Assembly (NCBI RefSeq): GCF_006345805.1
Contig: NC_043006.1
Span: 4,092,001-4,156,000 of the forward strand
Reading direction: 5' to 3'
DNA: 64,000 bases
Origin: Octopus sinensis
Lineage: Eukaryota
In this document: positions 19,617 to 56,820 of the stretch, piece after piece
How the letters are laid out: each line of letters opens with the position of its first letter
How positions within the stretch are numbered: position 1 is the stretch's first letter
Notes under the pieces: generated by a model
What the model was told of the DNA's origin: nothing
Seen by the model: the letters and a program-made list of their open reading frames with translations, nothing else
The model's database searches: none
Translations under genes and position numbers: made by a program

Positions 19617-22600
19617 CAACGCATGTTGTATCGCGGAACTCGTACCCTGCATTACAGTCACATTTGTAGGATCCTTGTGTGTTGGTGCATTTCCCCTTTC
19701 CCCCGCATGGGTCTCCTGTGCACTCGTCTGTGTCTGGAAAGTAAAACAATTTTATGGCATGGATATAAATCTTATGTATCATCATTATCATCATCATCAT
19801 CATTAATCATCAATCATCATTAATCATCATCATCAATGAAGAATCATCATTAATCATCATAATCATTAGCAACATCATAATCATCACCACCATTATCATC
19901 AACATCATCGACATTATTATTATTATTATTATTATTAATATTATTATTATTATTACTTTTTTTTTTCTTCTTTCAAATTAGCTTCCATTTCTTGCCGAGT
20001 GTCTTCCCGACTCCTAGGGTAAGAAACTCATAGTATACATTGGTAGGCCATTAAACCAAACTCAATAGTTCGTTCATTTTTTATTTTTTTTAAGTTAAAT
20101 TAAAATACATGAACAGCAACAGTTCTCACATCGACAATACTCTTCTCAATACGTGTGATGTACCAGCTAAGACAATCTTTTGCACTTCTTGCAGGGATGG
20201 TAAGCCAGGGATCATTCGCATATAATTTTCGGTTCCCTTCTTGATCATTCCTAGTGCTCCTACGATCATTGGTATTGTAACCGCCTTGAGATGCCACATT
20301 TTCTCAATTCAATGAGTAGGTCTTTATATTTTCTGAGCTTGTCAAACTCTTTCGCTGAGATATTATGATCACAGGGGATGCTCATGTCGATCAATAGCAA
20401 ACTTTATGTTTTGGTCTTTCACAAAAATATCTGGTTTATTGGCCTTCATGGTTCGGTCTGTATGTACTGGAAAGTCCCACAGAATGGTTACATTTTCTCC
20501 TTCAGTTACAGCCTCAGGGAGGTGATTATACCACTTGTTGGCAGTTTTGATATTGTAATGCCGACTTATTAGCCAATGTAGATATTGGCCAACTCTGTCT
20601 TGTCTTAATTTATACTCCACTGGTGCTAAGACTTTACATCCAGAGATTAGGTGGTCCACTGTTTCAATCATGTCATTGCAGAATCGGCATTTTGGGTCTG
20701 CTCCATTTTTCATTACATTGGCCTGGTAGTTCCGGGTTAATAGGCTTTGATCTTGAGCAGCCAGGATGAAACCTTTGCTCTCTGCTTTTAGCCCTGAGCT
20801 CCGTAGCCACTGATCGGTTTGCTTCTGGTCAACATCAGCTTGTTTGCTACGGGCCACATATTTGCCGTGCAGAGGTTTCTCCTCCCACCTATCAGCCAAT
20901 TGCTCGTGCGCTTTTTTCGTTGCCATTATTTTCACCTTCTTTGCAACAATAGTTGCCGTACTTCCCTCGGGTTGTTCAGTTTGGGTATCCTGCACGAGAT
21001 CAATAGCAAATTTTTTACTTTCCTTTATGATAGAACGAAGCTTCTTTCGTCTCTCGTGATTTTCCACAAGCTTTAGCATCCAGTCATTCGTTATTTCGAG
21101 ATATTTGGCAATAATATTATTATTATTATTATTAATATTATTATGATTATTATTATTATTATTATTATTAATCATCATCATCAATCATCATCATCAATGA
21201 ATAATCATCATAATCATGAGCATCATCCTCATCATCAATCATCATTAATCATCATCATCAATCATCATCATCAATGAATGATCATCATTAATCATCATAA
21301 TCATTAGCAACATCATTATCATCACCAACATTATCACCACCATCATCATCAACATCATCGACATTATTATTATTATTATTATTAATATAACTTGAATCCA
21401 GTTACGCCTATACGCGTGATGTCTGTTCTGCTTTACTTACCAACGCATGTTGTTTCGCGGAACTCGTACCCTGCATTACAGTCACATGTGTAGGATCCTT
21501 GTGTGTTGGTGCATTTCCCGTTTTCCCCGCATGGGTCTCCTGTGCACTCGTCTGTGTCTGGAAAGTAAAACAATTTTATGGCATGGATATAAATCTTTTG
21601 TATCATCATCATCATCATCAATGATCAATCATCATCAATCATCATCATCAATCATCATCATCAATCATCATCATCAATGAATGATCATCATAATCATGAG
21701 CATCATCATCATCATCAATCATCATTAATCATCATCATCAATCATCATCATCAATGAATGATCATCATTAAACATCATAATCATTAGCAACATCATAATC
21801 ATCACCACCATTATCACCACCATCATCACCAACATCATCGACATTATTATCATTATTATTATTACTAATATAACTTGAATCCAGTTACACCTATACGCGT
21901 GATGTCTGTTCTGCTTTACTTACCAACGCATGTTCTTTCGCGGAACTCGTACCCTGCATTACAGTCACATGTGTAGGATCCTTGTGTGTTGGTGCATTTC
22001 CCCTTTTCCCCGCATGGGTCTCCTTTGCACTCGTCTGTGTCTGGAAAGTAAAACAATATTATGGCATGGATATAAATCTTTTGTATCATCATCATCATCA
22101 TCAATGATCAATCATCATCAATCATCATCATCAATCATCATCATCAATGAATGATAATCATGAGCATCATCATCATCATCAATCATCATTAATCATCATC
22201 ATCAATCATCATCATCAATGAATGATCATCATTAAACATCATGATCATTAGCAACGTCATAATCATCACCACCATTATCACCACCATCATCAACATCATC
22301 GACATTATTATTATTATTATTATTATTAATATAACTTGAATCCAGTTACACCTATACGCGTGATGTCTGTTCTGCTTTACTTACCAACGCATGTTGTATC
22401 GCGGAACTCGTACCCTGCATTACAGTCACATTTGTAGGATCCTTGTGTGTTGGTGCATTTCCCCTTTCCCCCGCATGGGTCTCCTGTGCACTCGTCTGTG
22501 TCTGGAAAGTAAAACAATTTTATGGCATGGATATAAATCTTATGTATCATCATTATCATCATCATCATCATTAATCATCAATCATCATTAATCATCATCA

Positions 22601-25600
22601 TCAATGAAGAATCATCATTAATCATCATAATCATTAGCAACATCATAATCATCACCACCATTATCATCACATCATCGACATTATTATTATTATATTATTA
22701 TTAATATTATTATTATTATTACTTTTTTTTTTCTTCTTTCAAATTATCTTCCATTTCTTGCCGAGTGTCTTCCCGACTCCTAGGGTAAGAAACTCATAGT
22801 ATACATTGGTAGGCCATTAAACCAAACTCAATAGTTCGTTCATTTTTTATTTTTTTTAAGTTAAATTAAAATATATGAGCAGCAACAGTTCTCACATCGA
22901 CAATACTCTTCTCAATACGTGTGATGTACCAGCTAAGACAATCTTTTGCACTTCTTGCAGGGATGGTAAGCCAGGGATCATTCGCATATAATTTTCGGTT
23001 CCCTTCTTGATCATTCCTAGTGCTCCTACGATCATTGGTATTGTAACCGCCTTGAGATGCCACATTTTCTCAATTTCAATGAGTAGGTCTTTATATTTTC
23101 TGAGCTTGTCAAACTCTTTCGCTGAGATATTATGATCACAGGGGATGCTCATGTCGATCAATAAGCAAACTTTATTGTTTTGGTCTTTCACAAAAATATC
23201 TGGTTTATTGGCCTCATGGTTCGGTCTGTATGTACTGGAAGTCCCACAGAATGGTTACATTTTCTCCTTCAGTTACAGCCTCAGGGAGGTGATTATACCA
23301 CTTGTTGGCAGTTTTGATATTGTAATGCCGACTTATTAGCCAATGTAGATATTGGCCAACTCTGTCTTGTCTTAATTTATACTCCACTGGTGCTAAGACT
23401 TTACATCCAGAGATTAGGTGGTCCACTGTTTCAATCATGTCATTGCAGAATCGGCATTTTGGGTCTGCTCCATTTTTCATTACATTGGCCTGGTAGTTCC
23501 GGGTTAATAGGCTTTGATCTTGAGCAGCCAGGATGAAACTTTCGCTCTCTGCTTTTAACACTGAGCTCCGTAGCCACTGATGGGTTTGCTTCTGGTCAAC
23601 ATCAGCTTGTTTGCTGCGGGCCACATATTTGCCATGCAGAGGTTTCTCCTCCCACCTATCAGCCAATTGCTCGTGCGCTTTTTTCGTTGCCATTATTTTC
23701 ATCATCATTGATCATCATCATCAATCATCATCATCATGAATGATCATCATTAAACATCATAATCATTAGCAACGTCATAATCATCACCACCATTATCACC
23801 ACCAACATCAACATCATCGACATTATATTATTATTATTATTACTTTTTTTTTTCTTCTTTCAAATTATCTTCCATTTCTTGCCGAGTGTCTTCCCGACTC
23901 CTAGGGTAAGAAACTCATAGTATACATTGGTAGGCCATTAAACCAAACTCAATAGTTCGTTCATTTTTTATTTTTTTAAGTTAAATTAAAATATATGAGC
24001 AGCAACAGTTCTCACATCGACAATACTCTTCTCAATACGTGTGATGTACCAGCTAAGACAATCTTTTGCACTTCTTGCAGGGATGGTAAGCCAGGGATCA
24101 TTCGCATATAATTTTCGGTTCCCTTCTTGATCATTCCTAGTGCTCCTACGATCATTGGTATTGTAACCGCCTTGAGATGCCACATTTTCTCAATTTCAAT
24201 GAGTAGGTCTTTATATTTTCTGAGCTTGTCAAACTCTTTCGCTGAGATATTATGATCACAGGGGATGCTCATGTCGATCAATAAGCAAACTTTATTGTTT
24301 TGGTCTTTCACAAAAATATCTGGTTTATTGGCCTTCATGGTTCGGTCTGTATGTACTGGAAAGTCCCACAGAATGGTTACATTTTCTCCTTCAGTTACAG
24401 CCTCAGGGAGGTGATTATACCACTTGTTGGCAGTTTTGATATTGTAATGCCGACTTATTAGCCAATGTAGATATTGGCCAACTCTGTCTTGTCTTAATTT
24501 ATACTCCACTGGTGCTAAGACTTTACATCCAGAGATTAGGTGGTCCACTGTTTCAATCATGTCATTGCAGAATCGGCATTTTGGGTCTGCTCCATTTTTC
24601 ATTACATTGGCCTGGTAGTTCCGGTTAATAGGCTTTGATCTTGAGCAGCCAGGATGAAACTTTCGCTCTCTGCTTTTAACACTGAGCTCCGTAGCCACTG
24701 ATGGGTTTGCTTCTGGTCAACATCAGCTTGTTTGCTGCGGGCCACATATTTGCCATGCAGAGGTTTCTCCTCCCACCTATCAGCCAATTGCTCGTGCGCT
24801 TTTTTCGTTGCCATTATTTTCATCATCATTGATCATCATCATCAATCATCATCATCAATGAATGATCATCATTAAACATCATAATCATTAGCAACGTCAT
24901 AATCATCACCACCATTATCACCACCAACATCAACATCATCGACATTATTATTATTATTATTATTAATATATCTTGAATCCAGTTACACCTATACGCGTGA
25001 TGTCTGTTCTCCTTTACTTACCAACGCATGTTGTTTCGCGGAACTCGTACCCTGCATTACAGTCACATGTGTAGGATCCTTGTGTGTTGGTGCACTTCCC
25101 CTTTTCCCCGCATGGGTCTCCTTTGCACTCGTCTGTGTCTGGAAAGTAAAACAATTTTATGGCATGGATATAAATCTTTTGTATCATCATCATCATCATC
25201 AATGATCAATCATCATCAATCATCATCATCAATCATCATCATCAATCATCATCATCAATGAATGATCATCATAATCATGAGCATCATCCTCATCATCAAT
25301 CATCATTAATCATCATCATCAATCATCATCATCAATGAATGATCATCATTAAACATCATAATCATTAGCAACATCATAATCATCACCAACATCATCGACA
25401 TTATTATTATTATTATTACTGATATAACTTGAATCCAGTTACACCTATACGCGTGATGTCTGTTCTGCTTTACTTACCAACGCATGTTGTTTCGCGGAAC
25501 TCGTACCCTGCATTACAGTCACATGTGTAGGATCCTTGTGTGTTGGTGCATTTCCCCTTTTCCCCGCATGGGTCTCCTTTGCACTCGTCTGTGTCTGGAA

Positions 25601-28600
25601 AGTAAAACAATTTTATGGCACGTATATAAATCTTTTGTATCATCATCATCAGCATCAATGATCAATCATCATCAATCATCATCATCAATGAATGATCATC
25701 ATAATCATGAGCATCATCATCATCATCAATCATCATTAATCATCATCATCATCATCATCATCAATGATCAATCATCATCAATCATCATCATCAATCATCA
25801 TCATCAATCATCATCATCAATGAATGATCATCATAATCATGAGCATCATCATCATCATCAATCATCATTAATCATCATCATCAATCATCATCATCAATGA
25901 ATGATCATCATTAAACATAATCATTAGCAACATCAATCATCACCACCATTATCACCACCATCATCACCAAAATCATCGACATTATTATTATTATTATTAC
26001 AATATAACTTGAATCCAGTTACACCTATACGCGTGATGTCTGTTCTGCTTAACTTACCAACGCATGTTGTTTCGCGGAACTCGTACCCTGCATTACAGTC
26101 ACATGTGTAGGATCCTGTGTGTTGGTGCATTTCCCCATTTTCCCCGCATGGGTCTCCTTTGCACTCGTCTGTGTCTGGAAAGTAAAACAATTTTATGGCA
26201 TGGATATAAATCTTTTGTATCATCATCATCATCATCAATGATCAATCATCATCAATCATCATCATCAATCATCATCATCAATGAATGATCATCATAATCA
26301 TGAGCATCATCATCATCATTAATCATCATTAATGTTAATCATCAATCATCATCATCAATGATCAATCATCATCAATCATCATCAATCATCATCATCAATC
26401 ATCATCATCAATGAATGATCATCATAATCATGAGCATCATCATCATCAATCATCATTAATCATCATCATCAATCATCATCATCAATGAATGATCATCATT
26501 AAATATCATAATCATTAGCAACATCATAATCATCACCACCATTATGACCACCATCATCACCAACATCATCGACATTATTATTATTATTATTATTAATATA
26601 ACTTGAATCCAGTTACACCTATACGCGTGATGTCTGTTCTGCTTTACTTACCAACGCATGTTGTTTCACGGAACTCGTACCCTGCATTACAGTCACATGT
26701 GTAGGATCCTTGTGTGTTGGTGCATTTCCCTTTTCCCCGCATGGGTCTCCTTTGCACTCGTCTGTGTCTGGAAAAAAACAATTTTATGGCACGTATATAA
26801 ATCTTTTGTATCATCATCATCATCATCAATGATCATATCATCAATCATCATCATCAATCATCATCATCAATGAATGATCATCATAATCATGAGAATCATC
26901 ATCATCATCAATCATCATCATCAATGAATGATCATCATTAACATCATAATATTAGCAACATCATAATCATCACCACAATTACCACCCATCATCTACATCA
27001 TCGACAAATTATTATTATTATTATTATTAATATATCTGAATCCAGTTACACCTATACGCGTGATGTCTGTTCTGCTTTACTTACAACAATGTTGTTTCAC
27101 GGAACTCGTACCCTGCATTACAGTCACATGTGTAGGATCTTGTGTGTTGGTGCATTTCCCCTTTTCCCCGCATGGGTCTCCTTTGCACTCGTCTGTGTCT
27201 GGAAAGTAAAACAATTTATGGCATGGATATAAATCTTTTGTGTCATCCTCATCATCATCAATGATCAATCATCACTCAATCATCATCATCAATCATCACA
27301 TCAATCATCATCATCAATCATCATCATCAATGAATGATCATCATAATCATGAGCATCATATCATCATCAATCATCATTAATCATCATCATCATCATCATC
27401 ATCAATGAATATCATCATTAAACATCATAATCTAGCAACATCATAATCATCACCACATTTCACCGCCATCATCACCAACATCATCGAAATTATATTATTA
27501 TTATTACTTATATAACTGAATCCAGTTACACCTATACGCGTGATGTCTGTTCTGCTTACTTACCAACGCATGTTGTTTCACGGAACTCGTACCTGCATTA
27601 CAGTCACATGTGTAGGATCCTTGTGTGTTGGTGCATTCCCCTTTTCCCCGCATGGGTCTCCTTTGCACTCGTCTGTGTTCTGGAAAGTAAAACAATTTTA
27701 TGGCATGGATATAAATCTTTTGATCATCATCATCATCAATGATCAATCATCATCAATCATCTTCATCAATCATCATCATCAATGAATGATCATCATAATC
27801 ATGAGCATCATCATCATCATCAATCATCATTAATCATCATCATATCATCATCATCAATGATCAATCATCATCAATCATCATCAATCATCATCATCAATCA
27901 TCATCATCAATGAATGATCATCATAATCATGAGCATCATCATCATCATCAATCATCATTAATCATCATCATCAATCATCATCATCAATGAATGATCATCA
28001 TTAAATATCATAATCATTAGCAACATCATAATCATCACCACCATTATGACCACCATCATCACCAACATCATCGACATTATTATGATTATTATTATTATTA
28101 ATATAACTTGAATCCAGTTACACCTATACGCGTGATGTCTGTTCTGCTTTACTTACCAACACATGTTGTTTCACGGAACTCGTACCCTGCATTACAGTCA
28201 CATGTGTAGGATCCTTGTGTGTTGGTGCATTTCCCTTTTCCCGCATGGGTCTCCTTTGCACTCGTCTGTGTCTGGAAAGCAAACAATTTTATGGCACGAT
28301 ATAAGTCTTTTGTATCATCATCATCATCATCAATGATCAATCATCATCAATCATCATCATCAATCATCATCATCAATGAATGATCATCATAATCATGAGC
28401 ATCATCTCATCATCAATCATCGTTGATCATCATCATCAATGAATATCATCATTAACATCATAATCATTAGCAACGTCATAATCATCACCACATTATCACC
28501 ACCATCATCAACATCAACGACATTATTATTATTATTATTATTAATATAACTTGAATCCAGTTTACACCTAACGCGTGATGTCTGTTCTGCTTTACTTACC

Positions 28601-31600
28601 AACGCAAGTTGTTTCGCGGAACTCGTACCCTGCATTACAGTCACATGTGTAGGATCCTTGTGTGTTGGTGCATTTCCCCTTTTCCCCGCATGGGTCTCCT
28701 TTGCACTCGTCTGTGTCTGGAAAGTAAAACAATTTTATGGCATGGATATAAATCTTTTGTATCATCATCATCATCATCAATGATCAATCATCATCATTCA
28801 TCATCATCAATCATCATCATCAATGAATGATCATCATAATCATGAGCATCATCATCATCATCAATCATCATTAATCATCATCATCATCATCATCATCAAT
28901 GATCAATCATCATCAATCATCATCATCAATCATCATCATCAATCATCATCATCAATGAATGATCATCATAATCATGAGCATCATCATCATCATCAATCAT
29001 CATTAATGTTAATCATCAATCATCATCATCAATGAATGATCATCATTAAACATCATAATCATTAGCAACATCATAATCATCACCACCATTATGACCACCA
29101 TCATCACCAACATCATCGACATTATTATTATTATTATTATTATTATTAATATAACTTGAATCCAGTTACACCTATACGCGTGATGTCTGTTCTGCTTTAC
29201 TTACCAACGCATGTTGTTTCGCGGAACTCGTACCCTGCGTTACAGTCACATGTGTAGGATCCCTGTGTGTTGGTGCATTTCCCCTTTTCCCCGCATGGGT
29301 CTCCTTTGCACTCGTCTGTGTGTCGGAAAGTAAAACAATTTTATGGCATGGATATAAATCTTTTGTGTCATCATCATCATCATCAATGATCAATCATCAT
29401 CAATCATCATCATCAATCATCATCATCAATCATCATCATCAATCATCATCATCAATCATCATCGTCAATGAACGATCATCATAATCATGAGCATCATCAT
29501 CATCATCAATCATCATTAATCATCATCATCATCATCATCATCAATGAATTATCATCATTAAACATCATAATCATTAGCAACATCATAATCATCACCACCA
29601 TTATCACCACCATCATCAACATCAATGATCAATCATCATCATCATCATCATCATCATCAATGATCAATCATCATCAATCATCATCATCAATCATCATCAT
29701 CAATCATCATCATCAATGAATGATCATCATAATCATGAGCATCATCATCATCATCAATCATCATTAATCATCATCATCAATCATCATCATCAATGAATGA
29801 TCATCATTAAACATCATAATCATTAGCAACATCATAATCATCACCACCATTATGACCACCATCATCACCAACATCATCGACATTATTATTATTATTATTA
29901 TTAATATAACTTGAATCCAGTTACACCTATACGCGTGATGTCTCTTCTGCTTTACTTACCAACGCATGTTGTTTCACGGAACTCGTACCCTGCATTACAG
30001 TCACATGTGTAGGATCCTTGTGTGTTGGTGCTTTCCCCCTTTCCCCGCATGGGTCTCCTTTGCACTCGTCTGTGTCTGGAAAGCAAAACAATTTTACGGC
30101 ACGTATAAAATCTTTTGTATCATCATCATCATCATCAATGATCAATCATCATCAATCATCATCATCAATCATCATCATCAATGAATGATCATCATAATCA
30201 TGAGCATCATCATCATCATCAATCATCGTTAATCATCATCATCAATGAATTATCATCATTAAACATCATAATCATTAGCAACGTCATAATCATCACCACC
30301 ATTATCACCACCATCATCAACATCAACGACATTATTATTATTATTATTATTAATATAACTTGAATCCAGTTACACCTATACGCGTGATGTCTGTTCTGCT
30401 TTACTTACCAACGCATGTTGTATCGCGGAACTCGTACCCTGCATTACAGTCACATGTGTAGGATCCTTGTGTGTTGGTGCACTTCCCCTTTTCCCCGCAT
30501 GGGTCTCCGTGCACTCGTCTGTGTCTGGAAAGTAAAACAATTTTATGGCATGGATATAAATTTTCTATCATCATCATCATATCAATGATCAATCATCATC
30601 AATCATCATCATCAATCATCATCATCATCATCATCATCAATGATGATCATCATAATCATGAGCATCATCATCATCATCAATCATCATCATCAATGAATGA
30701 TCATCATTAAACATCATAATCATTAGCAACATCATAATCATCACCGCCATTATCACCACCATCATCACCAACATCATCGACATTATTATTATTATTATTA
30801 TTATTAATATAACTTGAATCCAGTTACACCTATACGCGTGATGTCTGTTCTGCTTTACTTACCAACGCATGTTGTTTCACGGAACTCGTACCCTGCATTA
30901 CAGTCACATGTGTAGGATCCTTGTGTGTTGGTGCATTTCCCCTTTTCCCCGCATGGGTCTCCTTTGCACTCGTCTGTGTCTGGAAAGCAAAACAATTTTA
31001 TGGCACGTATATAAATCTTTTGTATCATCATCATCATCATCAATGATCAATCATCATCAATCATCATCATCAATCATCATCATCAATGAATGATCATCAT
31101 AATCATGAGCATCATCATCATCATCAATCATCATTAATCATCATCATCATCATCATCATCAATGATCAATCATCATCAATCATCATCATCAATCATCATC
31201 ATCAATCATCATCATCAATCATCATCATCAATGAATCATCATCATTAAACATCATAATCATTAGCAACATCATAATCATCACCGCCATTATCACCACCAT
31301 CATCACCAACATCATCGACATTATTATTATTATTATTATTATAAATAAACTTGAATCCAGTTACACTTATACGCGTGATGTCTGTTCTGCTTACTTACCA
31401 ACGCATGTTGTTTCACGGAACTCGTACCCTGCATTACAGTCACATGTGTAGGATCTTGTGTGTTGGTGCATTTCCCTTTTCCCCGCATGGGTCTCCTTTG
31501 CACTCGTCTGTGTCTGGAAAGCAAAACAATTTTATGGCACGTATATAAATCTTTTGTATCATCATCATCATCATCAATGATCAATCATCATCATCATCAT

Positions 31601-33197
31601 CATCAATCATCATCATCATGAATGATCATCATAATCATGAGCATCATCATCATCATCAATCATCGTTAATCATCATCATCAATGAATTATCATCATTAAA
31701 CATCATAATCATAGCAACGTCATAATCATCACCACCATTATCACCACCATCATCAACATCAACGACATTATTATTATTATTATTATTAATATAACTTGAA
31801 TCCAGTTACACCTATACGCGTGATGTCTGTTCTGCTTTACTTACCAACGCATGTTGTATCGCGGAACTCGTACCCTGCATTACAGTCACATGTGTAGGAT
31901 CCTTGTGTGTTGGTGCACTTCCCCTTTTCCCCGCATGGGTCTCCTGTGCACTCGTCAGTGTCTGGAAAGTAAAACAATTTTATGGCATGGATATAAATCT
32001 TTTGTATCATCATCATCATCATCAATGATCCATCATCATCAATCATCATCATCAATCATCATCATCAATCATCATCATCATGAATGATCATCATAATCAT
32101 GAGCATCATCATCATCATCAATCATCATCAATGAATGATCATCATTAAACATCATAATCATTAGCAACATCATAATCATCACCACCATTATCACCACCAT
32201 CATCTACATCATCGACATTATATTATTATTATTATTAATATATCTTGAATCCAGTTACACCTATACGCGTGATGTCTGTTCTGCTTTACTTACCAACGCA
32301 TGTTTTCGCGGAACTCGTACCCTGCATTACAGTCACATGTGTAGGATCCTTGTGTGTTGGTGCATTTCCCCTTTTCCCCGCATGGGTCTCCTTTGCACTC
32401 GTCTGTGTCTGGAAAGTAATACAATTTTATGGCATGGATATAAATCTTTTGTATCATCATCATCATCATCATGATCAATCATCATCAATCATCATCATCA
32501 ATCATCATCATCAATCATCATCATCAATGAATGATCATCATAATCATGAGCATCATCATCATCATCAATCATCATATAATCTCATCATCAATCATCATCA
32601 TCATGAATGATCATTAAACATCATAATCATTAGCAACATCATAATCATCACCACCATTATCACCACCATCATCACCAACATCATCGACCTTATTATTGTT
32701 ATTATTATTAATATATCTTGAATCCAGTTACACCTATACGCGTGATGTCTGTTCTGCTTTACTTACCAACGCATGTTGTTTCACGGAACTCGTACCCTGC
32801 ATTACAGTCACATGTGTAGGATCCTTGTGTGTTGGTGCATTTCCCCTTTTCCCCGCATGGGTCTCCTTTGCACTCGTCTGTGTCTGGAAAGTAAAACAAT
32901 TTTATGGCATGGATATAAATCTTTTGTATCATCATCATCATCATCAATGATCAATCATCATCAATCATCATCATCAATCATCATCATCAATGAATGATCA
33001 TCATAATCATGAGCATCATCATCATCATCAATCATCATTAATCATCATCATCATCATCATCATCAATGATCAATCATCATCAATCATCATCATCAATCAT
33101 CATCATCAATGAATCATCATCATTAAACATCATAATCATTAGCAACATCATAATCATCACCACCATTATCACCACCATCATCACCAACATCATCGAC

Positions 33198-33228
<31 letters not shown>

Positions 33229-36200
33229 ACTTGAATCCAGTTACACCTATACGCGTGATGTCTGTTTGCTTTACTTACCAACGCATGTTGTTTCACGGAA
33301 CTCGTACCCTGCATTACAGTCACATGTGTACGATCCTTGTGTGTTGGTGCATTCCCCTTTTCCCCGCATGGGTCTCCTTTGCACTCGTCTGTGTCTGGAA
33401 AGCAAAACATTTTATGGCACGTATATAAATCTTTTGTATCATCATCATCATCATCAATGATCAATCATCATCAATCATCATCATCAATCATCATCATCAA
33501 TGAATGATCATCATAATCATGAGCATCATCATCATCATCAATCATCGTTAATCATCATCATCAATGAATTATCATCATTAAACATCATAATCATTAGCAA
33601 CGTCATAATCATCACCACCATTATCACCACCATCATCAACATCAACGACATTATTATTATTATTATTATTAATATAACTTGAATCCAGTTACACCTATAC
33701 GCGTGATGTCTGTTCTGCTTTACTTACCAACGCATGTTGTTTCACGGAACTCGTACCCTGCATTACAGTCACATGTGTAGGATCCTTGTGTGTTGGTGCA
33801 TTTCCCCTTTTCCCCGCATGGGTCTCCTTTGCACTCGTCTGTGTCTGGAAAGCAAAACAATTTTATGGCACGTATATAAATCTTTTGTATCATCATCATC
33901 ATCATCAATGATCAATCATCATCAATCATCATCATCAATCATCATCATCAATGAATGATCATCATAATCATGAGCATCATCATCATCATCATCAATCATC
34001 ATCATCAATCAATGAATGATCATCATTAAACATCATAATCATTAGCAACGTCATAATCATCACCACCATTATCACCACCATCATCAACATCATCGACATT
34101 ATTATTATTATTATTAATTAATAACTTGAATCCAGTTACGCCTATACGCGTGATGTCTGTTCTGCTTTACTTACCAACGCATGTTGTTTCGCGGAACTCG
34201 TACCCTGCATTACAGTCACATGTGTAGGATCCTTGTGTGTTGGTGCATTTCCCCTTTCCCCCGCATGGGTCTCCTTTGCACTCGTCTGTGTCTGGAAAGT
34301 AAAACAATTTTATGGCATGGATATAAATTTTGTATCATCATCATCATCATCATCAATGATCAATCATCATCAATCATCATCATCAATCATCATCATCATC
34401 ATCATCATCAATGAATGATCATCATAATCATGAGCATCATCATCATCATCAATCATCATCATCAATGAATGATCATCATTAAACATCATAATCATTAGCA
34501 ACATCATAATCATCACCACCATTATCACCACCATCATCTACATCATCGACATTATTATTATTATTATTATTAATATATCTTGAATCCAGTTACACCTATA
34601 CGCGTGATGTCTGTTCTGCTTTACTTACCAACGCATGTTCTTTCGCGGAACTCGTACCCTGCATTACAGTCACATGTGTAGGATCCTTGTGTGTTGGTGC
34701 ATTTCCCCTTTTCCCCGCATGGGTTTCCTTTGCACTCGTCTGTGTCTGGAAAGTAAAACAATTTTATGGCATGGATATAAATCTTTTGTATCATCATCAT
34801 CATCATCAATGATCAATCATCATCAATCATCATCATCAATGAATGATCATCATAATCATGAGCATCATCATCATCATCAATCATCATTAATCATCATCAT
34901 CATCATCATCATCAATGATCATCATCAATCATCAATCATCATCATCAATCATCATCATCAATCATCATCTCAATGAATGATCATCATAATCATGAGCATC
35001 ATCATCATCATCAATCATCATTAATCATATCATCAATCAATCATCAATGAATGATCATAATTAAACATCATAATCATTAGCAACATCATAATCATCACCA
35101 CCATTATCACCACATCATCACCAACATCATCGACATTATTATTATTATTATTATTACTAATATAACTTGAATCCAGTTACACCTATACGCGTGATGTCTG
35201 TTCTGCTTTACTTACCAACGCATGTTGTATCGCGGAACTCGTACCCTGCATTACAGTCACATGTGTAGGATCCTTGTGTGTTGGTGCACTTCCCCTTTTC
35301 CCCGCATGGGTCTCCTGTGCACTCGTCTGTGTCTGGAAAGTAAAACAATTTTATGGCATGGATATAAATCTTTTGTATCATCATCATCATCATCAATGAT
35401 CAATCATCATCAATCATCATCATCAATCATCATCATCAATCATCATCATCAATGAATGATCATCATAATCATGAGCATCATCATCATCATCAATCATCAT
35501 CATCAATGAATGATCATCATTAAACATCATAATCATTAGCAACATCATAATCATCACCACCATTATCACCACCATCATCTACATCATCGACATTATTATT
35601 ATTATTATTAATATATCTTGAATCCAGTTACACCTATACGCGTGATGTCTGTTCTGCTTTACTTACCAACGCATGTTCTTTCGCGGAACTCGTACCCTGC
35701 ATTACAGTCACATGTGTAGGATCCTTGTGTGTTGGTGCATTTCCCCTTTTCCCCGCATGGGTCTCCTTTGCACTCGTCTGTGTCTGGAAAGTAAAACAAT
35801 TTTATGGCATGGATATAAATCTTTTGTATCATCATCATCATCATCAATGATCAATCATCATCAATCATCATCATCAATCATCATCATCAATCATCATCAT
35901 CAATGAATGATCATCATAATCATGAGCATCATCATCATCATCAATCATCATTAATCATCATCATCAATCATCATCATCAATGAATGATCATTAAACATCA
36001 TAATCATTAGCAACATCATAATCATCACCACCATTATCACCACCATCATCACCAACATCATCGACATTATTATTGTTATTATTATTAATATATCTTGAAT
36101 CCAGTTACACCTATACGCGTGATGTCTGTTCTGCTTTACTTACCAACGCATGTTGTTTCACGGAACTCGTACCCTGCATTACAGTCACATGTGTAGGATC

Positions 36201-36414
36201 CTTGTGTGTTGGTGCATTTCCCCTTTTCCCCGCATGGGTCTCCTTTGCACTCGTCTGTGTCTGGAAAGTAAAACAATTTTATGGCATGGATATAAATCTT
36301 TTGTATCATCATCATCATCATCAATGATCAATCATCATCAATCATCATCATCAATCATCATCATCAATGAATGATCATCATAATCATTCAGCATCATCAT
36401 CATCAATCATCATT

Positions 36415-36445
<31 letters not shown>

Positions 36446-42400: not shown

Positions 42401-44856
42401 GTACCCTGCATTACAGTCACATGTGTAGGATCCTTGTGTGTTGGTGCATTTCCCCTTTTCCCCGCATGGGTCTCCTTTGCACTCGTCTGTGTCTGGAAAG
42501 TAATACAATTTTATGGCATGGATATAAATCTTTTGTATCATCATCATCATCATCAATGATCAATCATCATCAATCATCATCATCAATCATCATCATCAAT
42601 CATCATCATCAATGAATGATCATCATAATCATGAGCATCATCATCATCATCAATCATCATTAATCATCATCATCAATCATCATCATCAATGAATGATCAT
42701 CATTAAACATCATAATCATTAGCAACATCATAATCATCACCACCATTATCACCACCATCATCACCAACATCATCGACATTATTATTATTATTATTATTAT
42801 TAATATAACTTGAATCCAGTTACACCTATACGCGTGATGTCTGTTCTGCTTTACTTACCAACGCATGTTGTTTCACGGAACTCGTACCCTGCATTACAGT
42901 CACATGTGTAGGATCCTTGTGTGTTGGTGCATTTCCCCTTTTCCCCGCATGGGTCTCCTTTGCACTCGTCTGTGTCTGGAAAGTAAAACAATTTTATGGC
43001 ATGGATATAAATCTTTTGTATCATCATCATCATCATCAATGATCAATCATCATCAATCATCATCATCAATCATCATCATCAATCATCATCATCAATGAAT
43101 GATCATCATAATCATGAGCATCATCATCATCATCAATCATCATTAATCATCATCATCAATCATCATCATCAATGAATGATCATCATTAATACATCATCAT
43201 TAGCAACATCATAATCATCACCACCATTATCACCACCATCATCTCAACATCATCGACATTATTATTATTATTATTACTAATATAACTTGAATCCAGTTAC
43301 ACCTATACGCGTGATGTCTGTTCTGCTTTACTTACCAACGCATGTTGTATCGCGGAACTCGTACCCTGCATTACAGTCACATGTGTAGGATCCTTGTGTG
43401 TGGGTGCATTTCCCCTTTTCCCCCCATGGTCTCCTTTGTGGCACTCGTCTGTGTCTGGTAAAAAAAACAATTTTATGGCATGGATATAAATCTTTTGTAT
43501 CATCATCATCATCATCAATGATCAATCATCATCAATCATCATCATCAATCATCATCATCAATGAATGATCATCATAATCATGAGCATCATCATCATCATC
43601 AATCATCATTAATCATCATCATCATCATCATCATCAATGATCAATCATCATCAATCATCATCATCAATCATCATCATCAATCATCATCATCAATGAATCA
43701 TCATCATTAAACATCATAATCATTAGCAACATCATAATCATCACCACCATTATCACCACCATCATCACCAACATCATCGACATTATTATTATTATTATTA
43801 CTAATATAACTTGAATCCAGTTACACCTATACGCGTGATGTCTGTTCTGCTTTACTTACCAACGCATGTTGTTTCACGGAATTCGTACCCTGTATTACAG
43901 TCACATGTGTAGGATCCTTGTGTGTTGGTGCATTTCCCCTTTTCCCCGCATGGGTCTCCTTTGCACTCGTTTGTGTCTGGAAAGCAAAACAATTTTATGG
44001 CATGTATATAAATATTTTGTATCATCATCATCATCATCAATGATCAATCATCATCAATCATCATAATCATGAGCATCATCATCATCATCAATCATCATTA
44101 ATCATCATCAGCAATCATCATCATCAATGAATGATCATCATTAAACATCATAATCATTAGCAACATCATAATCATCACCACCATCATCACCAACATCATC
44201 GACATTATTGTTATTATTATTATTAATATAACTTGAATCCAGTTACACCTATACGCGTGATGTCTGTTCTGCTTTACTTACCAACGCATGTTGTTTCACG
44301 GAACTCGTACCCTGCATTACAGTCACATGTGTAGGATCCTTGTGTGTTGGTGCATTTCCCCTTTTCCCCGCATGGGTCTCCTTTGCACTCGTCTGTGTCT
44401 GGAAAGCAAAACAATTTTATGGCATGGATATAAATCTTTTGTATCATCATCATCATCATCATCAATGATCAATCATCATCAATCATCATCATCAATCATC
44501 ATCAATGAATGATCATCATAATCATGAGCATCATCATCATCATCAATCATCATTAATCATCATCATCAATCATCATCATCAATGAATGATCATCATTAAA
44601 CATCATAATCATTAGCAACATCATAATCATCACCACCATTATCATCAACATCACCGACATTATTATTATTATTATTATTATTAATGTAACTTGAATCCAG
44701 TTACACCTATACGCGTGATGTCTGTTCTGCTTTACTTACCAACGCATGTTGTATCGCGGAACTCGTACCCTGCATTACAGTCACATGTGTAGGATCCTTG
44801 TGTGTTGGTGCATTTCCCCTTTTCCCCGCATGGGTCTCCTTTGCACTCGTCTGTGT
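19617..44856 (-). CDS. Tandem array of 45 near-identical 117-bp phase-1/phase-1 exons, each a calcium-binding EGF domain ([39 protein letters not shown])
   Basis: Each exon bounded by TTTCCAG acceptor and GTAAGT donor; D-x-D-E-C and C-x-N-x4-Y-x-C-x-C cbEGF consensus. Apparently intact exons have their low coordinate at 19617, 21441, 21924, 22385, 25022, 25478, 28600, 30863, 31845, 32767, 33728, 34175, 34629, 35216, 35667, 36144, 36662, 37113, 37553, 38493, 38969, 40508, 40962, 41444, 42376, 42859, 43860, 44282, 44740 (each +116); about 16 others carry indels. Confidence 0.92.
19956..21113 (-). mobile_element. R4/Dong-clade retrotransposon 3' fragment, family B copy 1
   Basis: 271-aa ORF with CRFC...H....[18 protein letters not shown], then [12 protein letters not shown]; 3'UTR ends in A-run then (AAT)n; 5' junction also in (AAT)n. 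Confidence 0.9.
22722..23700 (-). mobile_element. R4/Dong family B copy 2 (shorter 5' end)
   Basis: Near-identical to 19956-20930; 5' end joined directly to ATG/ATC intron repeat at AAAATAATGGCAACG. Confidence 0.9.
23843..24820 (-). mobile_element. R4/Dong family B copy 3 (tandem duplicate of copy 2)
   Basis: Same ends and diagnostic variants ([10 protein letters not shown]) as copy 2; 228-aa ORF. Confidence 0.9.
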
Positions 44857-45114: not shown

Positions 45115-45577
45115 TTAGCGGAACTCGTACCCTGCATTACAGTCACATGTGTAGGATCCTTGTGTGTTGGTGCATTTCCCCTTTTCCCCGCATGCGTCTC
45201 CTGTGCACTCGTCTGTGTCTGGGAAGTAAAACAATTTTATGGCAAGGATATAAATCTTTTGTATCATCATCATCATCATCAATGATCAATCATCATCAAT
45301 CATCATCATCAATCATCATCATCAATCATCATCATCAATCATCATCATCAATCATCATCATCATCATCATCATCAATGAATAATCATAATCATGAGCATC
45401 ATCCTCATCATCAATCATCATTAATCATCATCATCAATCATCCTCATCAATGAATGATCATCATTAATCATCATTAGCGGAACTCGTACCCTGCATTACA
45501 GTCACATGTGTAGGATCCTTGTGTGTTGGTGCATTTCCCCTTTTCCCCGCATGGGTCTCCTGTGCACTCGTCTGTGT
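45115..45577 (-). pseudogene. Two tandem truncated EGF exons (45474-45577, 45115-45218) lacking the donor and ending GYEFR-stop
   Basis: Acceptor TTCCCAG retained; exon fused at CCGC|TAATGA to intron repeat; 359-bp spacing. Confidence 0.85.
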
Positions 45578-45760
45578 CTGGGAAGTAAAACAATTTTATG
45601 GCATGGATATAAATCTTTTGTATCATCATCATCATCATCATCAATGATCAATCGTCATCAATCATCATCATCAATCATCATCATCAATCATCATTATCAA
45701 TCATCATCATAAATGAAGAATCATCATTATCAATGAACAATCATTATTAATATTATTATT

Positions 45761-47923
45761 CTATGTTTGACTTTTGCTTTATGTTTGTACAAGTTGGCTC
45801 CAAGTGTCACCCAGTGACCTCAAGACACAACAGGTGGGAAGTTCACGTTGTTGTTATGCCTAGTGTGCCATATATTTAGGGTTTTTTTTGGTGTTGTTCT
45901 AGTGAATGTCTAATACATAGTTTAAAAAAAAAAGTTTGTTTCAAACCTTGGGATTACTTGGAGAGTATTTTGATAATGATGATTGTTCATTTATGATGAT
46001 GAATGATAATGATGATTGATTATGATGATAAATGATGATTGATGATTGATGATGATGATGATGATAATGATTATACATAAGATTTATATCCATGCCATAA
46101 AATATGAGCAGTTCCCATGAGCACTATCTCTTGAATTTCTGCCATTTCGGGGTTTCCTGGTATCTGAATTAGGTAGCAATCAGCCCCTTTCGCTATCTTT
46201 CCCTATGACAACAGGTATTGTTTTAGTCTTCAGCTTCCACATTTTGCTGATTTCTATTTCAAGATCTTTATATTTGCTCAGTTTTTGGTAGGTCTTGACA
46301 GATACGTTTATATCGATTGGGACAGTCATATCAATGAGGAGGCATGTTCTTTGTCTGAAGTCTTTCTATATGATGTCTGGCCTGTTTGCATCTATCTTTT
46401 TGTCAGTTTGAATGGTGAAGTTCCAGAGGAGTGAGATGTGGTCATTTTCAAGCACTGGAGGTGGATTGTGTTCCCACCAGTTTTTTCCATGGGGCAAATC
46501 CAGGTTTTTGCAAATTACCCAGTGAATATATTGTGCAGGTCTATCATGCCTGCTGAGGTACTCTGTAGGCGCAAGAAGACTGCACTTGGAGACAACATGA
46601 TCAATGGTTTCATTTTGTTGTCGGCATAAACGACATGTTGGGCTACTGCCGTTCTTTAATATGTTGGCCTGGTAGTTTCTTGTTGGTAGGCATTGATCTT
46701 GAGCTGCGATGATAAACCCTTCTGTTTCAGATTTTAAGCCAGAGGCCATTAGCCATTGATGGGTCAGGGCTTTATCAATATCTGCATTATTCGCTCTCTT
46801 TGGGTATTTGCCATAGAGAGGTTTTTCTTGCCATTTATTATTCAGAATATCTAAGGCCGCAGTTTTGGCACGGGTTTTCATGCGTTTAGCTTTTTCTGTG
46901 CTTGTTTCTTGTATGTCTATCTCTAATTCCGAAATTTGTTGTATTCAGAATTCACTTAGATATTCCTCTGCCTGTTTTGTTACTGAGTATGATGCTTTCT
47001 TGTTTTCATGTTTTGAGACAAGTTTTAACATCCAGTCCTCAGAGTTGTTCAGGTAGGTGTCTAGGCCAATTGTAGCAATCTTCATTGTTATTGCCAGTTG
47101 CAAAAGACCACGGCCTCCCTCTTTTCTTGGCAGATAAAGTCGTTCTGTATCTGCCTTAGGGTGGTGCATTCTATGCATTGTCAACAGTTTTCTTATTTTT
47201 CTGTCAAGCTGACATATTTCAGTAATTGACCAGTTAACGATATTGAAACTGTAAGTCACAACTGGTATGGCTGATGCATTGATCGCTTCGATCCTGTTTC
47301 TTGCATTCAGCTCTGTCTTCAGTATTGCTCTCACTCTTCGATAACATTCTCTCCTGATCCTTTCCTTCATCTCTGAATGCCTTATTCCGTTCCCTTCAAT
47401 TACCCCTAGGTACTTGTAGCTCTCCGCTGGGTCTAGTTCTTTTATGACATTCTGCTGGTCAAGGTTAACGTTAAATGTTTCTGTCATTTTTCCTTTGATA
47501 AAGGTAGCTTTTGCACATTTATCGAGGCCGAATTGCATTCTGATGTCGTCACTGAATTGTTTGACAATCGCTAGTAAGCCCTTGAGTTGTTGGTCATTTT
47601 TTGAAAAGAGCTTTAAATCATCCATGTAAATGAGATGATTTATATTTTTATCCAACATTTTATACCCGTACTGCGCGTCATTGAGCAGTTTTGAGAGAGG
47701 TATTAAGGCTAAACAAAAGAGGAGTGGTGACAGTGAGTCACCCTGGAAAATGCCACACAAAAGTTTTACATCACCAGCATTTAGGGATTCATTGTCACTG
47801 TTCAGAGTTAGTGTGGTTCTCCATGATCTCATACTTACAGTGAAAAAGTTTCACAGAGTAGGTGCTATCTTATACATTTCCAGGCATTTCCTAATCCAGC
47901 TATGTGGTAGGCTATCAAAAGCC

Positions 47924-47928
<5 letters not shown>
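45761..47928 (-). mobile_element. R4/Dong family A copy 2
   Basis: Colinear with 17463-19510, same 5' truncation point and same two in-frame TGA stops; interrupted at 45973-46101. Confidence 0.92.
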
Positions 47929-47961
<33 letters not shown>

Positions 47962-48015
47962 ATAACTTGAATCCAGTTACACCTATAAGCATGATGTCTG
48001 TTCTGCTTTACTTAC

Positions 48016-48132
48016 CAATGCATGTTGTTCCGCTGAACTCGAATCCTGGATTACAGACACATGTGTAGGATCCGTGATTGTTGGTGCATCTCCCATGTGC
48101 CCCGCATGGGTTCCCTGTGCACTCGTTTCTGT
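48016..48132 (-). CDS. Divergent cbEGF exon ([39 protein letters not shown])
   Basis: TTTCCAG/GTAAGT boundaries, 117 bp, phase 1-1. Confidence 0.9.
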
Positions 48133-48814: not shown

Positions 48815-49187
48815 AGTAGTTTTATTTTTATAGCGTGCTTTCTCTTCACTACCGAGTGCAGTTCTGGGTGCCTTGGGTATGTGCTGTGATTTGTTGTGAT
48901 GCTCTGATGGTTACTGTATTGAAAGTGTTCTGCGTAGGATGTATGCAGTGCCTAGTAGTGCAATTTTCTGTATGTTATATGTGTTTGTAAGTCCTGATGT
49001 TTTTGTTATGTATTTGTCTAAATATTTTTTTATCATGCCTAATACACCTACTATGATAGGAATTGTTTCTGTTTTTAGATTCCACATTCGAGTTACCTCT
49101 ATTTCCAGTTCTTTGTATTTTGAAAGTTTCTCCATTTCTTTTAGAGACACGTTGTCATCTGCTGGTATTGATACATCAATTAGAAAT
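48815..49187 (-). mobile_element. R4/Dong 3' fragment, family C copy 2
   Basis: EKLSKYKELEIEV...IPIIVGVLG; flanked by (AAT)n on both sides; diverged from copy 1. Confidence 0.85.
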
Positions 49188-49410: not shown

Positions 49411-49527
49411 CAGTGCATGTTCTGCTGTTAAAATGGAACCCTGGATGACAAACACATCTGTAGGATCCTAGTGTGTTGGTGCATCTCCCATGTGCCCCGC
49501 ATGGGTTCCCTGTGCACTCGTTTACGT
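49411..49527 (-). CDS. First cbEGF exon ([39 protein letters not shown])
   Basis: TTTTCCAG acceptor at 49528-9, GTAAGT donor at 49410; 117 bp, phase 1-1; not in the ORF track. Confidence 0.9.
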
Positions 49528-50187: not shown

Positions 50188-50264
50188 CTCTGCACCTTCC
50201 AGGCGTGCCGATCCATCCTCTGCAGCATTTGTAACAAGTTGAATGAATTATTCTGTAAGCTACC
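50188..50264 (-). CDS. EMI-like domain exon, C-terminal half (VAYRIIHSTCYKCCRGWIGTPGRCR)
   Basis: CTCTCTTAACAG acceptor, GTAAGA donor; 77 bp, phase 2 to phase 1, joins in frame to the 49527 exon (G+AC=Asp); AYR...CC.GW...C EMI signature. Confidence 0.85.
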
Positions 50265-56469: not shown

Positions 56470-56736
56470 ACAGCGCCACAAGTGAAGAGTGTAGATTGAG
56501 TAAGAAACAAAAGGTTGCTATATGAAATACCACATCATTAGCATTTATATTTAACAGGTGACCATATATCGGCAACGATAGAAATAAATAAGAATGTATA
56601 CATAGAAATTTCAAAATAGGAGAAGAGGAGGAAAATGCCGTTAGCTTGTGGTTTGCGTTATTGTGGATGCCGTTATATCGAAAGTTTACTCTGTAAAGAA
56701 AGATATAAAAACCGGAAAGTGTGGCCTCGTATTTAC

Positions 56737-56820
56737 GTGAATTTTTTACACCATCCGGAGGACCAGCACCAGGTTCGTCTTCTGTAGGTCACGCGTCGAG
56801 GACATGTCCATCTACATATC
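56737..56820 (-). CDS. EMI-like domain exon, N-terminal half (xICRWTCPRRVTYRRRTWCWSSGWCKKFT)
   Basis: CTTTTTTCAG acceptor, GTAAAT donor; 84 bp, phase 2-2, the only open frame; AC+G=Thr joins in frame to the 50264 exon. Confidence 0.75.

What the first reader, a model, noticed from the sequence alone, without database searches (positions are those of the whole stretch)
19617..56820. EMI-like plus ~47 cbEGF gene whose body is a 25-kb 'coding satellite' of interchangeable exons
Seen: two in-frame exons give an EMI-like domain, then two divergent cbEGF exons, then 45 almost identical 117-bp cbEGF exons, all phase 1-1, separated by homogenised ATC/ATT introns. About 29 array copies look intact. 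Known: EMI plus tandem EGF is the layout of the MEGF6/EGFL7 and CED-1/Draper/Nimrod-type extracellular proteins, and symmetric exons can be skipped or duplicated without changing frame. Inferred: a concertedly evolving, length-variable secreted or receptor protein, where both copy number and splicing set the rod length. Small per-exon variants (K/T, E/G, ETT/DTT/ERT/KTT) would add combinatorial diversity. Exons and introns homogenised together at this scale are unusual, and gene predictors would probably fragment the locus. I did not find a signal-peptide exon or a terminal exon in the window.
Basis: partly seen in the sequence, partly recalled or inferred. Interest (0 to 1): 0.85.

Follow-up and report, generated by a model that had tools for sequence, protein, structure and literature searches.

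The report
Octopus cbEGF gene with amplified exon array
An octopus gene for a secreted rod-like calcium-binding EGF protein has, in this species only, copied one 117-bp exon plus its intron 47 times in tandem; this is the same kind of coding repeat as the human LPA kringle array, not a new kind of genetic element.

Summary
On the minus strand lie a Cys-rich N-terminal module in two exons, two divergent cbEGF exons, and 47 (not 45) near-identical units of 359-756 bp. Each unit is one 117-bp phase 1-1 cbEGF exon plus a GAT/TAA-microsatellite intron. 29 units are fully intact.

I add four things:
- A terminal cbEGF exon at 16615-16485. Its donor is GT>AT and it runs into a stop, so the product looks secreted with no membrane anchor.
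- The orthologous Octopus sinensis locus has the same exon design, but its 12 exons differ from one another. The homogeneous array is therefore a recent, lineage-specific amplification.
- Exons diverge between the species as fast as or faster than introns (dN/dS about 1.2) while every Cys is kept.
- The array sits between two copies of a 2.4-kb duplication carrying the same truncated LINE, about 8 kb from a degenerate TTAGGG tract.

"EMI" is not confirmed: Pfam, PDB and homologue searches found nothing, and only a CCRGW signature remains. About a third of the units carry frameshifts, mostly 1-bp homopolymer indels that may be assembly noise. Expression, copy-number variation and splicing diversity are untested. 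It is a new member of a known kind (exon-intron coding VNTR, as in LPA KIV-2), of moderate interest.

The parts
56737..56820 (-). Exon A, 84 bp, phase 2-2: (x)ICRWTCPRRVTYRRRTWCWSSGWCKKF(T). It is the first half of the Cys-rich N-terminal module. It needs an upstream exon that was not found in the window.
   Evidence: Acceptor ttttttcag and donor gtaaat read directly. No plausible signal-peptide exon in 56821-64000.
50188..50264 (-). Exon B, 77 bp, phase 2-1: VAYRIIHSTCYKCCRGWIGTPGRCR. It carries the CCxGW signature.
   Evidence: It is conserved with both splice sites in O. sinensis (L001 6301-6375; 87% nucleotide and 80% amino-acid identity).
49411..49527 (-). E1, divergent cbEGF exon: [39 protein letters not shown].
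   Evidence: Its orthologue is L001 7087-7203 (88% nucleotide identity).
48016..48132 (-). E2, divergent cbEGF exon: [39 protein letters not shown]. Its 5' flank resembles E1, and its 3' flank resembles the last array unit.
45740..48015 (-). Intron before the array. It carries a 5'-truncated non-LTR retrotransposon (RVT_1 and zf-RVT parts). This is the upstream copy of a 2.4-kb direct duplication.
   Evidence: 17442-19835 aligns to 45740-48239. The LINE parts differ by 35 substitutions and 4 indels in 1925 bp. Pfam.
45118..45577 (-). Units u3 and u4. Both exons are truncated at base 102, run straight into a TAA stop and the microsatellite, and have no donor, so they are dead exons.
   Evidence: TRF reports period 362, 2.7 copies, 97% matches.
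19617..44856 (-). Main array, units u5-u49. Each unit is a 117-bp phase 1-1 cbEGF exon (consensus [39 protein letters not shown]), conserved splice flanks, and a (TAA)n(GAT)n intron. All 29 fully intact units lie here.
20100..21184 (-). Retroelement fragment of a second LINE family, inside the intron between u49 and u48.
   Evidence: zf-RVT. The block 19536-20943 is repeated at 22304-23710 with 98.6% identity.
22866..24829 (-). Two further copies of the same retroelement fragment, in the intron between u46 and u45.
17442..19616 (-). Intron after the array, holding the second copy of the truncated LINE and the downstream copy of the 2.4-kb duplication. A (TAT)n tract at 16660-17237 follows it.
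16485..16615 (-). Terminal cbEGF exon: DIDECKYVACAKNKHRICINTIGSYECRCKKGFHFQGKSCVDK*. The phase-1 acceptor is kept, the ancestral donor GGTAAGTAA is now GATAAGTAG, and the frame stops 2 codons later.
   Evidence: AATAAA lies 417 and 587 nt downstream.

Best explanation
This is an octopus gene on the minus strand, spanning at least 56820 to 16485, for a secreted protein made almost entirely of tandem calcium-binding EGF modules.

Shown:
- Each module is one 117-bp phase 1-1 exon.
- The design of one cbEGF per symmetric exon, with microsatellite-filled introns, is ancestral, because the Octopus sinensis orthologue has it.
- In the window's species one exon-intron unit has been amplified to 47 near-identical tandem copies.
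- The array is embedded in a 2.4-kb direct duplication.
- It lies about 8 kb from a degenerate telomere-repeat tract.

Inferred:
- The amplification came about by unequal crossing-over and gene conversion, helped by the microsatellite introns.
- The product is a Ca2+-stiffened rod. The Cys-rich cap and the two divergent modules at the N-terminus would give specificity. The homogeneous, acidic array would act as a spacer or avidity element, with its length set by copy number.
- The gene evolves fast at surface residues on a fixed Cys scaffold.
- Many of the 18 'broken' units are probably consensus errors of the assembly rather than real pseudo-exons.
For: Structure:
- 49 same-strand copies, 29 of the 47 array units fully intact, uniform splice sites and phase.
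- Pfam EGF_CA at 7.9e-36, with the DxDEC and CxNxxxxYxC motifs.
- 33 complete six-Cys modules in the window.
- A terminal exon with a disabled donor and a stop.

Orthology:
- The O. sinensis contig is colinear with the window. Introns are 91-95% identical.
- It has 12 intact but mutually divergent 117-bp phase 1-1 exons, with ttccag/gtaagtaaa sites and (ATA)n/(ATG)n introns.
- Array units differ from each other by about 2.5% but by 12.5% from the best O. sinensis unit. The amplification therefore post-dates the species split.

Exchange between units:
- Variants are mosaic, all four K/T6 x GAA/GAT35 combinations occur, and the unit types are interspersed.
- There is a 3.35-kb offset at 96% identity.
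- The same LINE lies before and after the array.

Fast evolution:
- Exons B, E1 and E2 are 83-88% identical between species, against 87-95% for their flanks.
- Fisher p = 0.02 and dN/dS = 1.23 for B+E1, with every Cys conserved.

Technical noise:
- In exons, private substitutions to indel events run 30:24. In the LINE pair outside the array the ratio is 35:4.
- The indels are mostly 1-bp deletions in short runs. They occur as often in exon as in flank, and about two thirds lie in units u29-u43.
Against: - There is no expression evidence of any kind.
- No protein among 5.8 billion clusters contains the array peptide.
- As assembled, 12 units with good splice sites have lengths that would shift the frame, and a thirteenth (u43) keeps its length but scrambles its interior. 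Full inclusion gives no open frame.
- Indel and substitution densities are the same in exon and flank, and N:S is near neutral. Nothing therefore shows selection on the array itself.
- The first two units are dead.
- The noisy units also carry extra substitutions, so real decay is not excluded.
- The 5' end, including any signal peptide, is missing, so 'secreted' rests on the domain type and the lack of a membrane segment.
- Only 30 of the 37.6 kb of the O. sinensis contig could be read, so a similar array there cannot be ruled out.
Confidence: 0.6

Rival explanations
1. The array is a decaying 'exon satellite'. An exon-intron unit was amplified as neutral DNA in a recombination-prone, telomere-repeat-adjacent region. 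The array is not translated, or the gene is now a pseudogene or ends before the array.
For: - 18 of 47 units are defective, including the first two.
- Indel density in exons (24 events per 117 nt) is not lower than in flanks.
- N:S among variants is near the neutral 4:1.
- No database protein carries the array peptide.
- Retroelements have accumulated inside the array.
Against: - The consensus and 29 units are perfect, with strong splice sites.
- The terminal exon beyond the array is old (about 45% identical to the others) yet keeps every cbEGF consensus residue and the acceptor. This argues that splicing across this region has been maintained.
- The orthologous exons in O. sinensis are all intact.
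- A near 1:1 ratio of substitutions to indels is unusual for natural decay.
Confidence: 0.27
2. Assembly artefact: the copy number is inflated or otherwise wrong because the assembler mishandled a shorter repeat.
For: - Such arrays are hard to assemble.
- Indel noise is concentrated inside the array.
- Some intron segments recur with identical TRF statistics about every 3.35 kb.
Against: - Units are not identical. There are distinct subtypes, unit lengths of 359-756 bp, unique retroelement insertions and a mosaic of variants.
- The best multi-unit self-match is 96%, not 100%.
- A 26-kb array is within the reach of single long reads.
Confidence: 0.08
3. It is a membrane receptor of the EMI-EGF class (CED-1/Draper/MEGF10 or Nimrod/Eater type). 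Its transmembrane and cytoplasmic exons lie beyond the window, or beyond the exon I call terminal.
For: - There is a CCRGW motif just before the first EGF module.
- Divergent N-terminal repeats followed by homogenised repeats recall Eater (own knowledge; family features in PMC4073527 and PMC6852320).
Against: - No Pfam EMI hit.
- The repeats do not fit the NIM consensus CxPxCxxxCxNGxC (against PMC4073527).
- The last exon has no donor and ends in a stop.
- No further Cys-pattern exon lies in 8.6-16.4 kb, which is followed by transposon fragments and the telomere-like tract.
Confidence: 0.05

Closest known systems
[quoted passage not shown]
   Same: The tandem units contain whole exons plus introns. 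They stay in frame, are nearly identical in both exon and intron, and copy number sets the length of a secreted protein.
   Different: Here the unit is about ten times smaller (about 470 bp) and holds one exon rather than two. The module is cbEGF rather than kringle. The introns are mostly microsatellite. Copy-number polymorphism and expression are unknown.
Drosophila/Anopheles Nimrod family, especially Eater (PMC4073527, PMC6852320)
   Same: A CCxG[YW] motif comes just before a long run of EGF-type repeats. Divergent N-terminal repeats are followed by many homogenised ones (the latter from my own knowledge of Eater). Secreted members (NimB) exist.
   Different: The repeats are calcium-binding EGF, not NIM. 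Each repeat is its own exon. No transmembrane segment was found. No sequence homology was detected.
Fibrillin/LTBP/fibulin-type cbEGF rods
   Same: Long tandem runs of cbEGF with the DxDEC and Asn-hydroxylation consensus. The best database hits by name are fibulin-, fibrillin-, LTBP- and ADGRE2-like proteins. A Ca2+-stiffened rod is expected (established knowledge).
   Different: There are no TB/8-Cys, fibulin-type or GPCR modules in the window. The modules are near-identical rather than individually conserved. Evolution is fast rather than strongly constrained.
EMI-domain proteins (EMILIN, multimerin, EGFL7, MEGF/CED-1)
   Same: An N-terminal Cys-rich module ends in CCxGW-x-G-x3-C and is directly followed by EGF modules. 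There is a VAYR...CCxG match to the EMILIN-1 EMI domain (that sequence is from memory, so it is only a lead).
   Different: The module is 53 aa with 8 Cys, against about 75 aa with 7 Cys. It fails the Pfam EMI profile. The N-terminal third may lie in the missing upstream exon.
Mouse zonadhesin D3p repeats and sea-urchin uEGF/fibropellin genes (own knowledge; Zan: PMC9275260)
   Same: Lineage-specific tandem amplification of exon-intron units encoding Cys-rich extracellular modules, combined with rapid sequence evolution.
   Different: Different domains or organisms. I did not re-read these loci here, so the comparison is only a recalled lead.

Membership tests
Calcium-binding EGF module (Pfam EGF_CA, PF07645) | Profile score above the gathering threshold | tested here: met
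   122.5 bits against a cut-off of 27, with 5 stretches in a 5-module construct.
Calcium-binding EGF module (Pfam EGF_CA, PF07645) | Six Cys pattern, N-terminal [DN]-x-[DN]-[EQ]-C, and C-x-[DN]-x4-[FY]-x-C | tested here: met
   DTDEC / DVNEC / DRNEC / DIDEC and [10 protein letters not shown]. There are 33 complete six-Cys modules in the window.
EMI domain (Pfam PF07546) | Match to the family profile | tested here: not met
   No Pfam family at E up to 10 for the 53/54-aa module. No PDB sequence hit. No homologue sharing 5-mers.
EMI domain (Pfam PF07546) | About 75 aa with 7 Cys, ending in CCxG[WYF]xGxxC | tested here: inconclusive
   The C-terminal signature YKCCRGWIGTPGRC is present. However, there are only 53 aa with 8 Cys, and the upstream exon is missing.
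Nimrod superfamily | NIM repeats CxPxCxxxCxNGxCxxPxxCxCxxGY (PMC4073527) | tested here: not met
   The repeats read [27 protein letters not shown], which is the cbEGF type.
Nimrod superfamily | [quoted passage not shown] | tested here: inconclusive
   CCRGW (W in place of Y) lies 10 residues before the first module. A signal peptide exon was not found in the window.
CED-1/Draper/MEGF receptors | Transmembrane segment and cytoplasmic tail after the EGF repeats | tested here: not met
   The frame ends ...SCVDK* in an exon without a donor. This holds within the window only.
Fibrillin/LTBP | TB (8-Cys) modules interspersed with cbEGF | tested here: not met
   Only EGF-type families were hit. No other Cys-rich exon was found on the gene strand.
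Exon-intron coding VNTR (LPA KIV-2 type) | Tandem units each holding whole in-frame exon(s) plus intron, highly similar in both | tested here: met
   There are 47 units with 117-bp phase 1-1 exons. Cores are about 97.5% identical and introns about 90%.
Exon-intron coding VNTR (LPA KIV-2 type) | Units are present in the mRNA, and copy number varies between alleles | not testable with these tools
   No reads, transcripts or second haplotype were available.

The most novel reading that the evidence does not exclude
The locus is a hypervariable recognition gene of octopuses for immune, gamete or surface recognition. A fast-evolving N-terminal binding head sits on a rod whose length differs between individuals through copy-number change in a telomere-adjacent array, and between transcripts through stochastic joining of interchangeable phase 1-1 exons. 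Both the germline and the spliceosome would then generate diversity.
Probability: 0.12. Interest if true: 0.7.

Novelty: new member of a known kind. Interest (0 to 1): 0.4.

Why it matters
If the array is expressed, it would be one of the largest known in-frame arrays of single-exon units. It would offer a tractable invertebrate counterpart to LPA KIV-2 for studying how exon-intron units amplify and homogenise, and how the spliceosome handles dozens of identical splice sites.

The contrast with O. sinensis dates the expansion to after the species split. The dN/dS of about 1 on a fixed Cys scaffold marks the gene as a candidate for adaptive evolution in cephalopods.

On the practical side, automatic annotation misses or garbles the locus, and its frameshifts may be a warning about polishing quality in repeats.

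Tried and rejected
- **EMI identity.** Pfam at E up to 10, PDB sequences and a 5-mer homologue search all came back empty. I did not try to get round that with another tool, so no structure prediction of the spliced module was made.
- **Signal-peptide exon.** A scan of 56821-64000 for Met plus a hydrophobic stretch plus a phase-2 donor gave only two poor candidates inside low-complexity DNA. Rejected.
- **Species identification.** An exact look-up of a window LINE ORF found nothing on record.
- **Clean higher-order repeat.** The mean core difference is flat (5.2-6.1) at unit offsets 1-15. Only a weak 7-unit (3.35-kb) signal appears in whole-unit alignments.
- **Positive selection creating the array-type exon from E2.** dN/dS is 1.86. 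I rejected this as proof because E2's 5' flank is also divergent and E1-like. E2 and the last array unit therefore share only their 3' flank through a duplication or conversion event.
- **Non-coding RNA.** Rfam and tRNA scans of the window found nothing.
- **Literature.** Two full-text searches found no description of this octopus gene.


Full report
**What is there**

Tandem Repeats Finder shows that 21-46 kb is a periodic array of about 360-480 bp units whose conserved part encodes, on the minus strand, a calcium-binding EGF module. BLAST with the 102-nt conserved part finds 49 copies, all in one orientation. Of these, 47 match at 91.7-100% identity (45 at 95% or more) between 19633 and 45578, and two match at 84-86% at 48032 and 49438.

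Reading each copy on the minus strand gives a uniform exon:
- acceptor TTTTACTTTCCAG;
- 117 bp in phase 1-1, with consensus [39 protein letters not shown];
- donor GTAAGTAAAG;
- about 60 nt of conserved intron, then (TAA)n and (GAT)n microsatellite.

E1 (49527-49411) and E2 (48132-48016) are intact divergent exons. Of the 47 array units, 29 are perfect and 18 are damaged. Unit length is 359-756 bp with a median of 468, and the array has 44 BamHI and 44 MluI sites.

**The ends of the gene**

Upstream there are two exons: exon A (56820-56737, phase 2-2) and exon B (50264-50188, phase 2-1). They have good splice sites, join in frame and feed into E1. Together they encode ICRWTCPRRVTYRRRTWCWSSGWCKKFTVAYRIIHSTCYKCCRGWIGTPGRCR. 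Exon A needs a further upstream exon. I found no credible signal-peptide exon up to position 64000.

- It has the same phase-1 acceptor and is visibly homologous to the array unit.
- The donor GGTAAGTAA has become GATAAGTAG, so the frame runs two codons into a stop.
- The module is old, only about 40-49% identical to the others, yet it keeps every consensus residue.
- I therefore read it as the true last coding exon. AATAAA lies 417 and 587 nt further on.
- No other six-Cys module exists anywhere in the window.

The product would be a cap, 2 divergent modules, up to 47 array modules and 1 terminal cbEGF module, with no membrane anchor.

**Domain identity**

A five-module construct scores 122.5 bits for Pfam EGF_CA against a cut-off of 27. 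The Ca-binding and Asn-hydroxylation motifs are present in all module types.

The 'EMI-like' cap is not confirmed:
- no Pfam family at E up to 10;
- no PDB sequence hit;
- no protein sharing three 5-mers among 5.8 billion clusters.

That alignment is a lead, not a test. It covers only the C-terminal two thirds of EMI, so the rest may lie in the missing 5' exon. The repeats do not fit the NIM consensus of the Nimrod family (PMC4073527).

**Relatives**

The only close database protein is a 165-aa Octopus sinensis model named 'adhesion G protein-coupled receptor E2-like'. It consists of three EGF exons fused to a transposase-like piece. Its contig (L001) is the orthologous locus:
- It is colinear with window 55.4-47.9 kb.
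- Introns are 91-95% identical to the window.
- Exon B is conserved, with both splice sites.
- It holds 12 cbEGF exons. All are 117 bp, phase 1-1, with ttccag/gtaagtaaa sites and open frames, and their introns are filled with (ATA)n/(ATG)n.
- Those 12 exons differ from one another; for example they range from 91 to 104 of 117 nt identical to the array consensus.

The window is thus from an octopus related to, but distinct from, O. sinensis. The 'one cbEGF per symmetric exon with microsatellite introns' design is ancestral.

The homogeneous 47-copy block is lineage-specific. Units differ from each other by about 5.5 of 217 core positions (2.5%) but by 12.5% from the best O. sinensis unit at L001 28807-29046. 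That unit's downstream intron is the one with (ATG)n.

**How the array was built**

- The intron before the array (45740-48015) and the intron after it (17442-19616) contain the same 5'-truncated non-LTR retrotransposon (RVT_1 and zf-RVT).
- The homology starts at the 3' end of the exon (E2 and the last unit u49) and stops about 230 bp beyond the LINE.
- The LINE parts differ by only 35 substitutions and 4 indels in 1925 bp.
- E2's exon and 5' flank are E1-like, while its 3' flank is u49-like. This marks a recombination or conversion junction at the conserved exon end.
- Inside the array, a second retroelement fragment and its host unit have themselves been duplicated (19536-20943 against 22304-23710 at 98.6%).
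- There is a weak 7-unit periodicity (offset 3350 bp at 96%).
- Unit subtypes are interspersed, and all four combinations of two exon polymorphisms occur. Units therefore exchange sequence.

All of this is the usual signature of unequal crossing-over and gene conversion. The microsatellite introns and the position about 8 kb from a 6-kb degenerate TTAGGG tract are plausible promoters of it. That last point is inference.

**Is it functional?**

For the gene as a whole:
- The orthologous exons and the old terminal exon keep all Cys and consensus residues and their splice sites. This is not expected of neutral DNA at these divergences.
- Between the two species, exons are no better conserved than introns. 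Exon B is 87%, E1 88% and E2 83-85% identical, against 87-95% for flanks. Fisher p is 0.02 for B+E1 against their introns.
- dN/dS is 1.23.
- A fixed scaffold with freely or adaptively changing surface residues is typical of recognition, reproductive and secreted defence proteins. The numbers are small, and gene conversion among exons may inflate them.

For the array itself, nothing shows selection:
- Indels are as frequent in exons as in flanks.
- Substitution density is similar in exons and flanks.
- N:S is 11:3 for shared variants and 19:11 for private ones, against a neutral 4:1.
- As assembled, 12 units with intact splice sites have lengths that would shift the frame, and a thirteenth (u43) keeps its length but scrambles its interior.

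I suspect that many of these defects are technical:
- They are mostly 1-bp deletions in short homopolymers.
- The ratio of substitutions to indels is about 1.2:1 in array exons, against about 9:1 in the LINE pair just outside the array.
- About two thirds of the events fall in units u29-u43 (26-33.4 kb), away from the array edges.
- These units also carry extra substitutions, so real decay cannot be excluded.

No transcript-derived or annotated protein with the array peptide exists in the searched collection. That is weak evidence, because the species may not be represented there.

**Verdict**

- Most likely (about 0.6): a real, lineage-specific coding exon-intron VNTR in a fast-evolving octopus gene for a secreted cbEGF rod.
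- Rival, about 0.27: the array is a non-translated or decaying exon satellite.
- Rival, about 0.08: the copy number is an assembly artefact.
- Rival, about 0.05: the gene is an EMI/Nimrod-type membrane receptor.

The kind of element is known. LPA KIV-2 has a 5.6-kb unit and 1-40 copies (PMC11462820). From my own knowledge, Eater and zonadhesin show comparable homogenised repeat blocks. This is therefore a new member of a known kind and of moderate interest.

Noticed in passing
window 2584-8581: A 6-kb tract of degenerate telomere-type repeats. TTAGGG lies on the + strand, only about 30% of units are perfect, and TTAGGT, TTAGTG and TTAGTT variants are common. It is flanked by other sequence on both sides, and its orientation is opposite to that of a true left-end telomere. 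It is therefore an interstitial or relic telomere array, or an assembly join. It lies about 8 kb from the gene's last exon.
   Followed up: partly
window 1-2558: A 22-bp satellite (CCCTCTTTGATCTCTTTCGGCA) of about 115 copies with about 83% matches. It abuts the telomere-like tract and runs off the window start.
   Followed up: no
window 55133-56364: A near-perfect palindrome of about 1.2 kb made of three nested inverted-repeat pairs of 120-189 nt, 94-97% complementary. It lies inside the 6.4-kb intron between exons A and B, and is probably a foldback or MITE-like insertion.
   Followed up: partly
window 16083-16448 (+): A 121-aa ORF with a helix-turn-helix, resembling the N-terminus of a mariner-type transposase, lies directly downstream of the terminal exon on the opposite strand. 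The O. sinensis gene model for the orthologous locus also begins with a Transposase_1-like piece.
   Followed up: partly
window 48337-48561 and 48911-49150 (-): Two tandem copies of a LINE 3'-end fragment (MEKLSKYKDLE...) lie in the E1-E2 intron. They are also present in O. sinensis (L001 8655-9107 and 9646-10106, 91% identity), so they pre-date the species split. The array does not.
   Followed up: partly
window 57256-57693 and 61777-62259 (-): Two more ORFs (145 aa and 160 aa) that look like retroelement C-terminal fragments lie upstream of exon A. Pfam gave no significant family. The whole 57-64 kb stretch looks like repeat debris with (TA)n, (AC)n and AATAAAA arrays.
   Followed up: partly
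L001 (O. sinensis VCDQ01005401.1) 26293-30426: O. sinensis shows its own small local amplification. Exons at 26293, 28034 and 29774 are close variants (DKDEC[KL]ATPCG[HA]QGTCTNNEGSYTCAC...) spaced about 1.74 kb apart, and the last two are separated by another exon type (28851). The locus is therefore dynamic in both species. The last 7 kb of that contig could not be read.
   Followed up: partly
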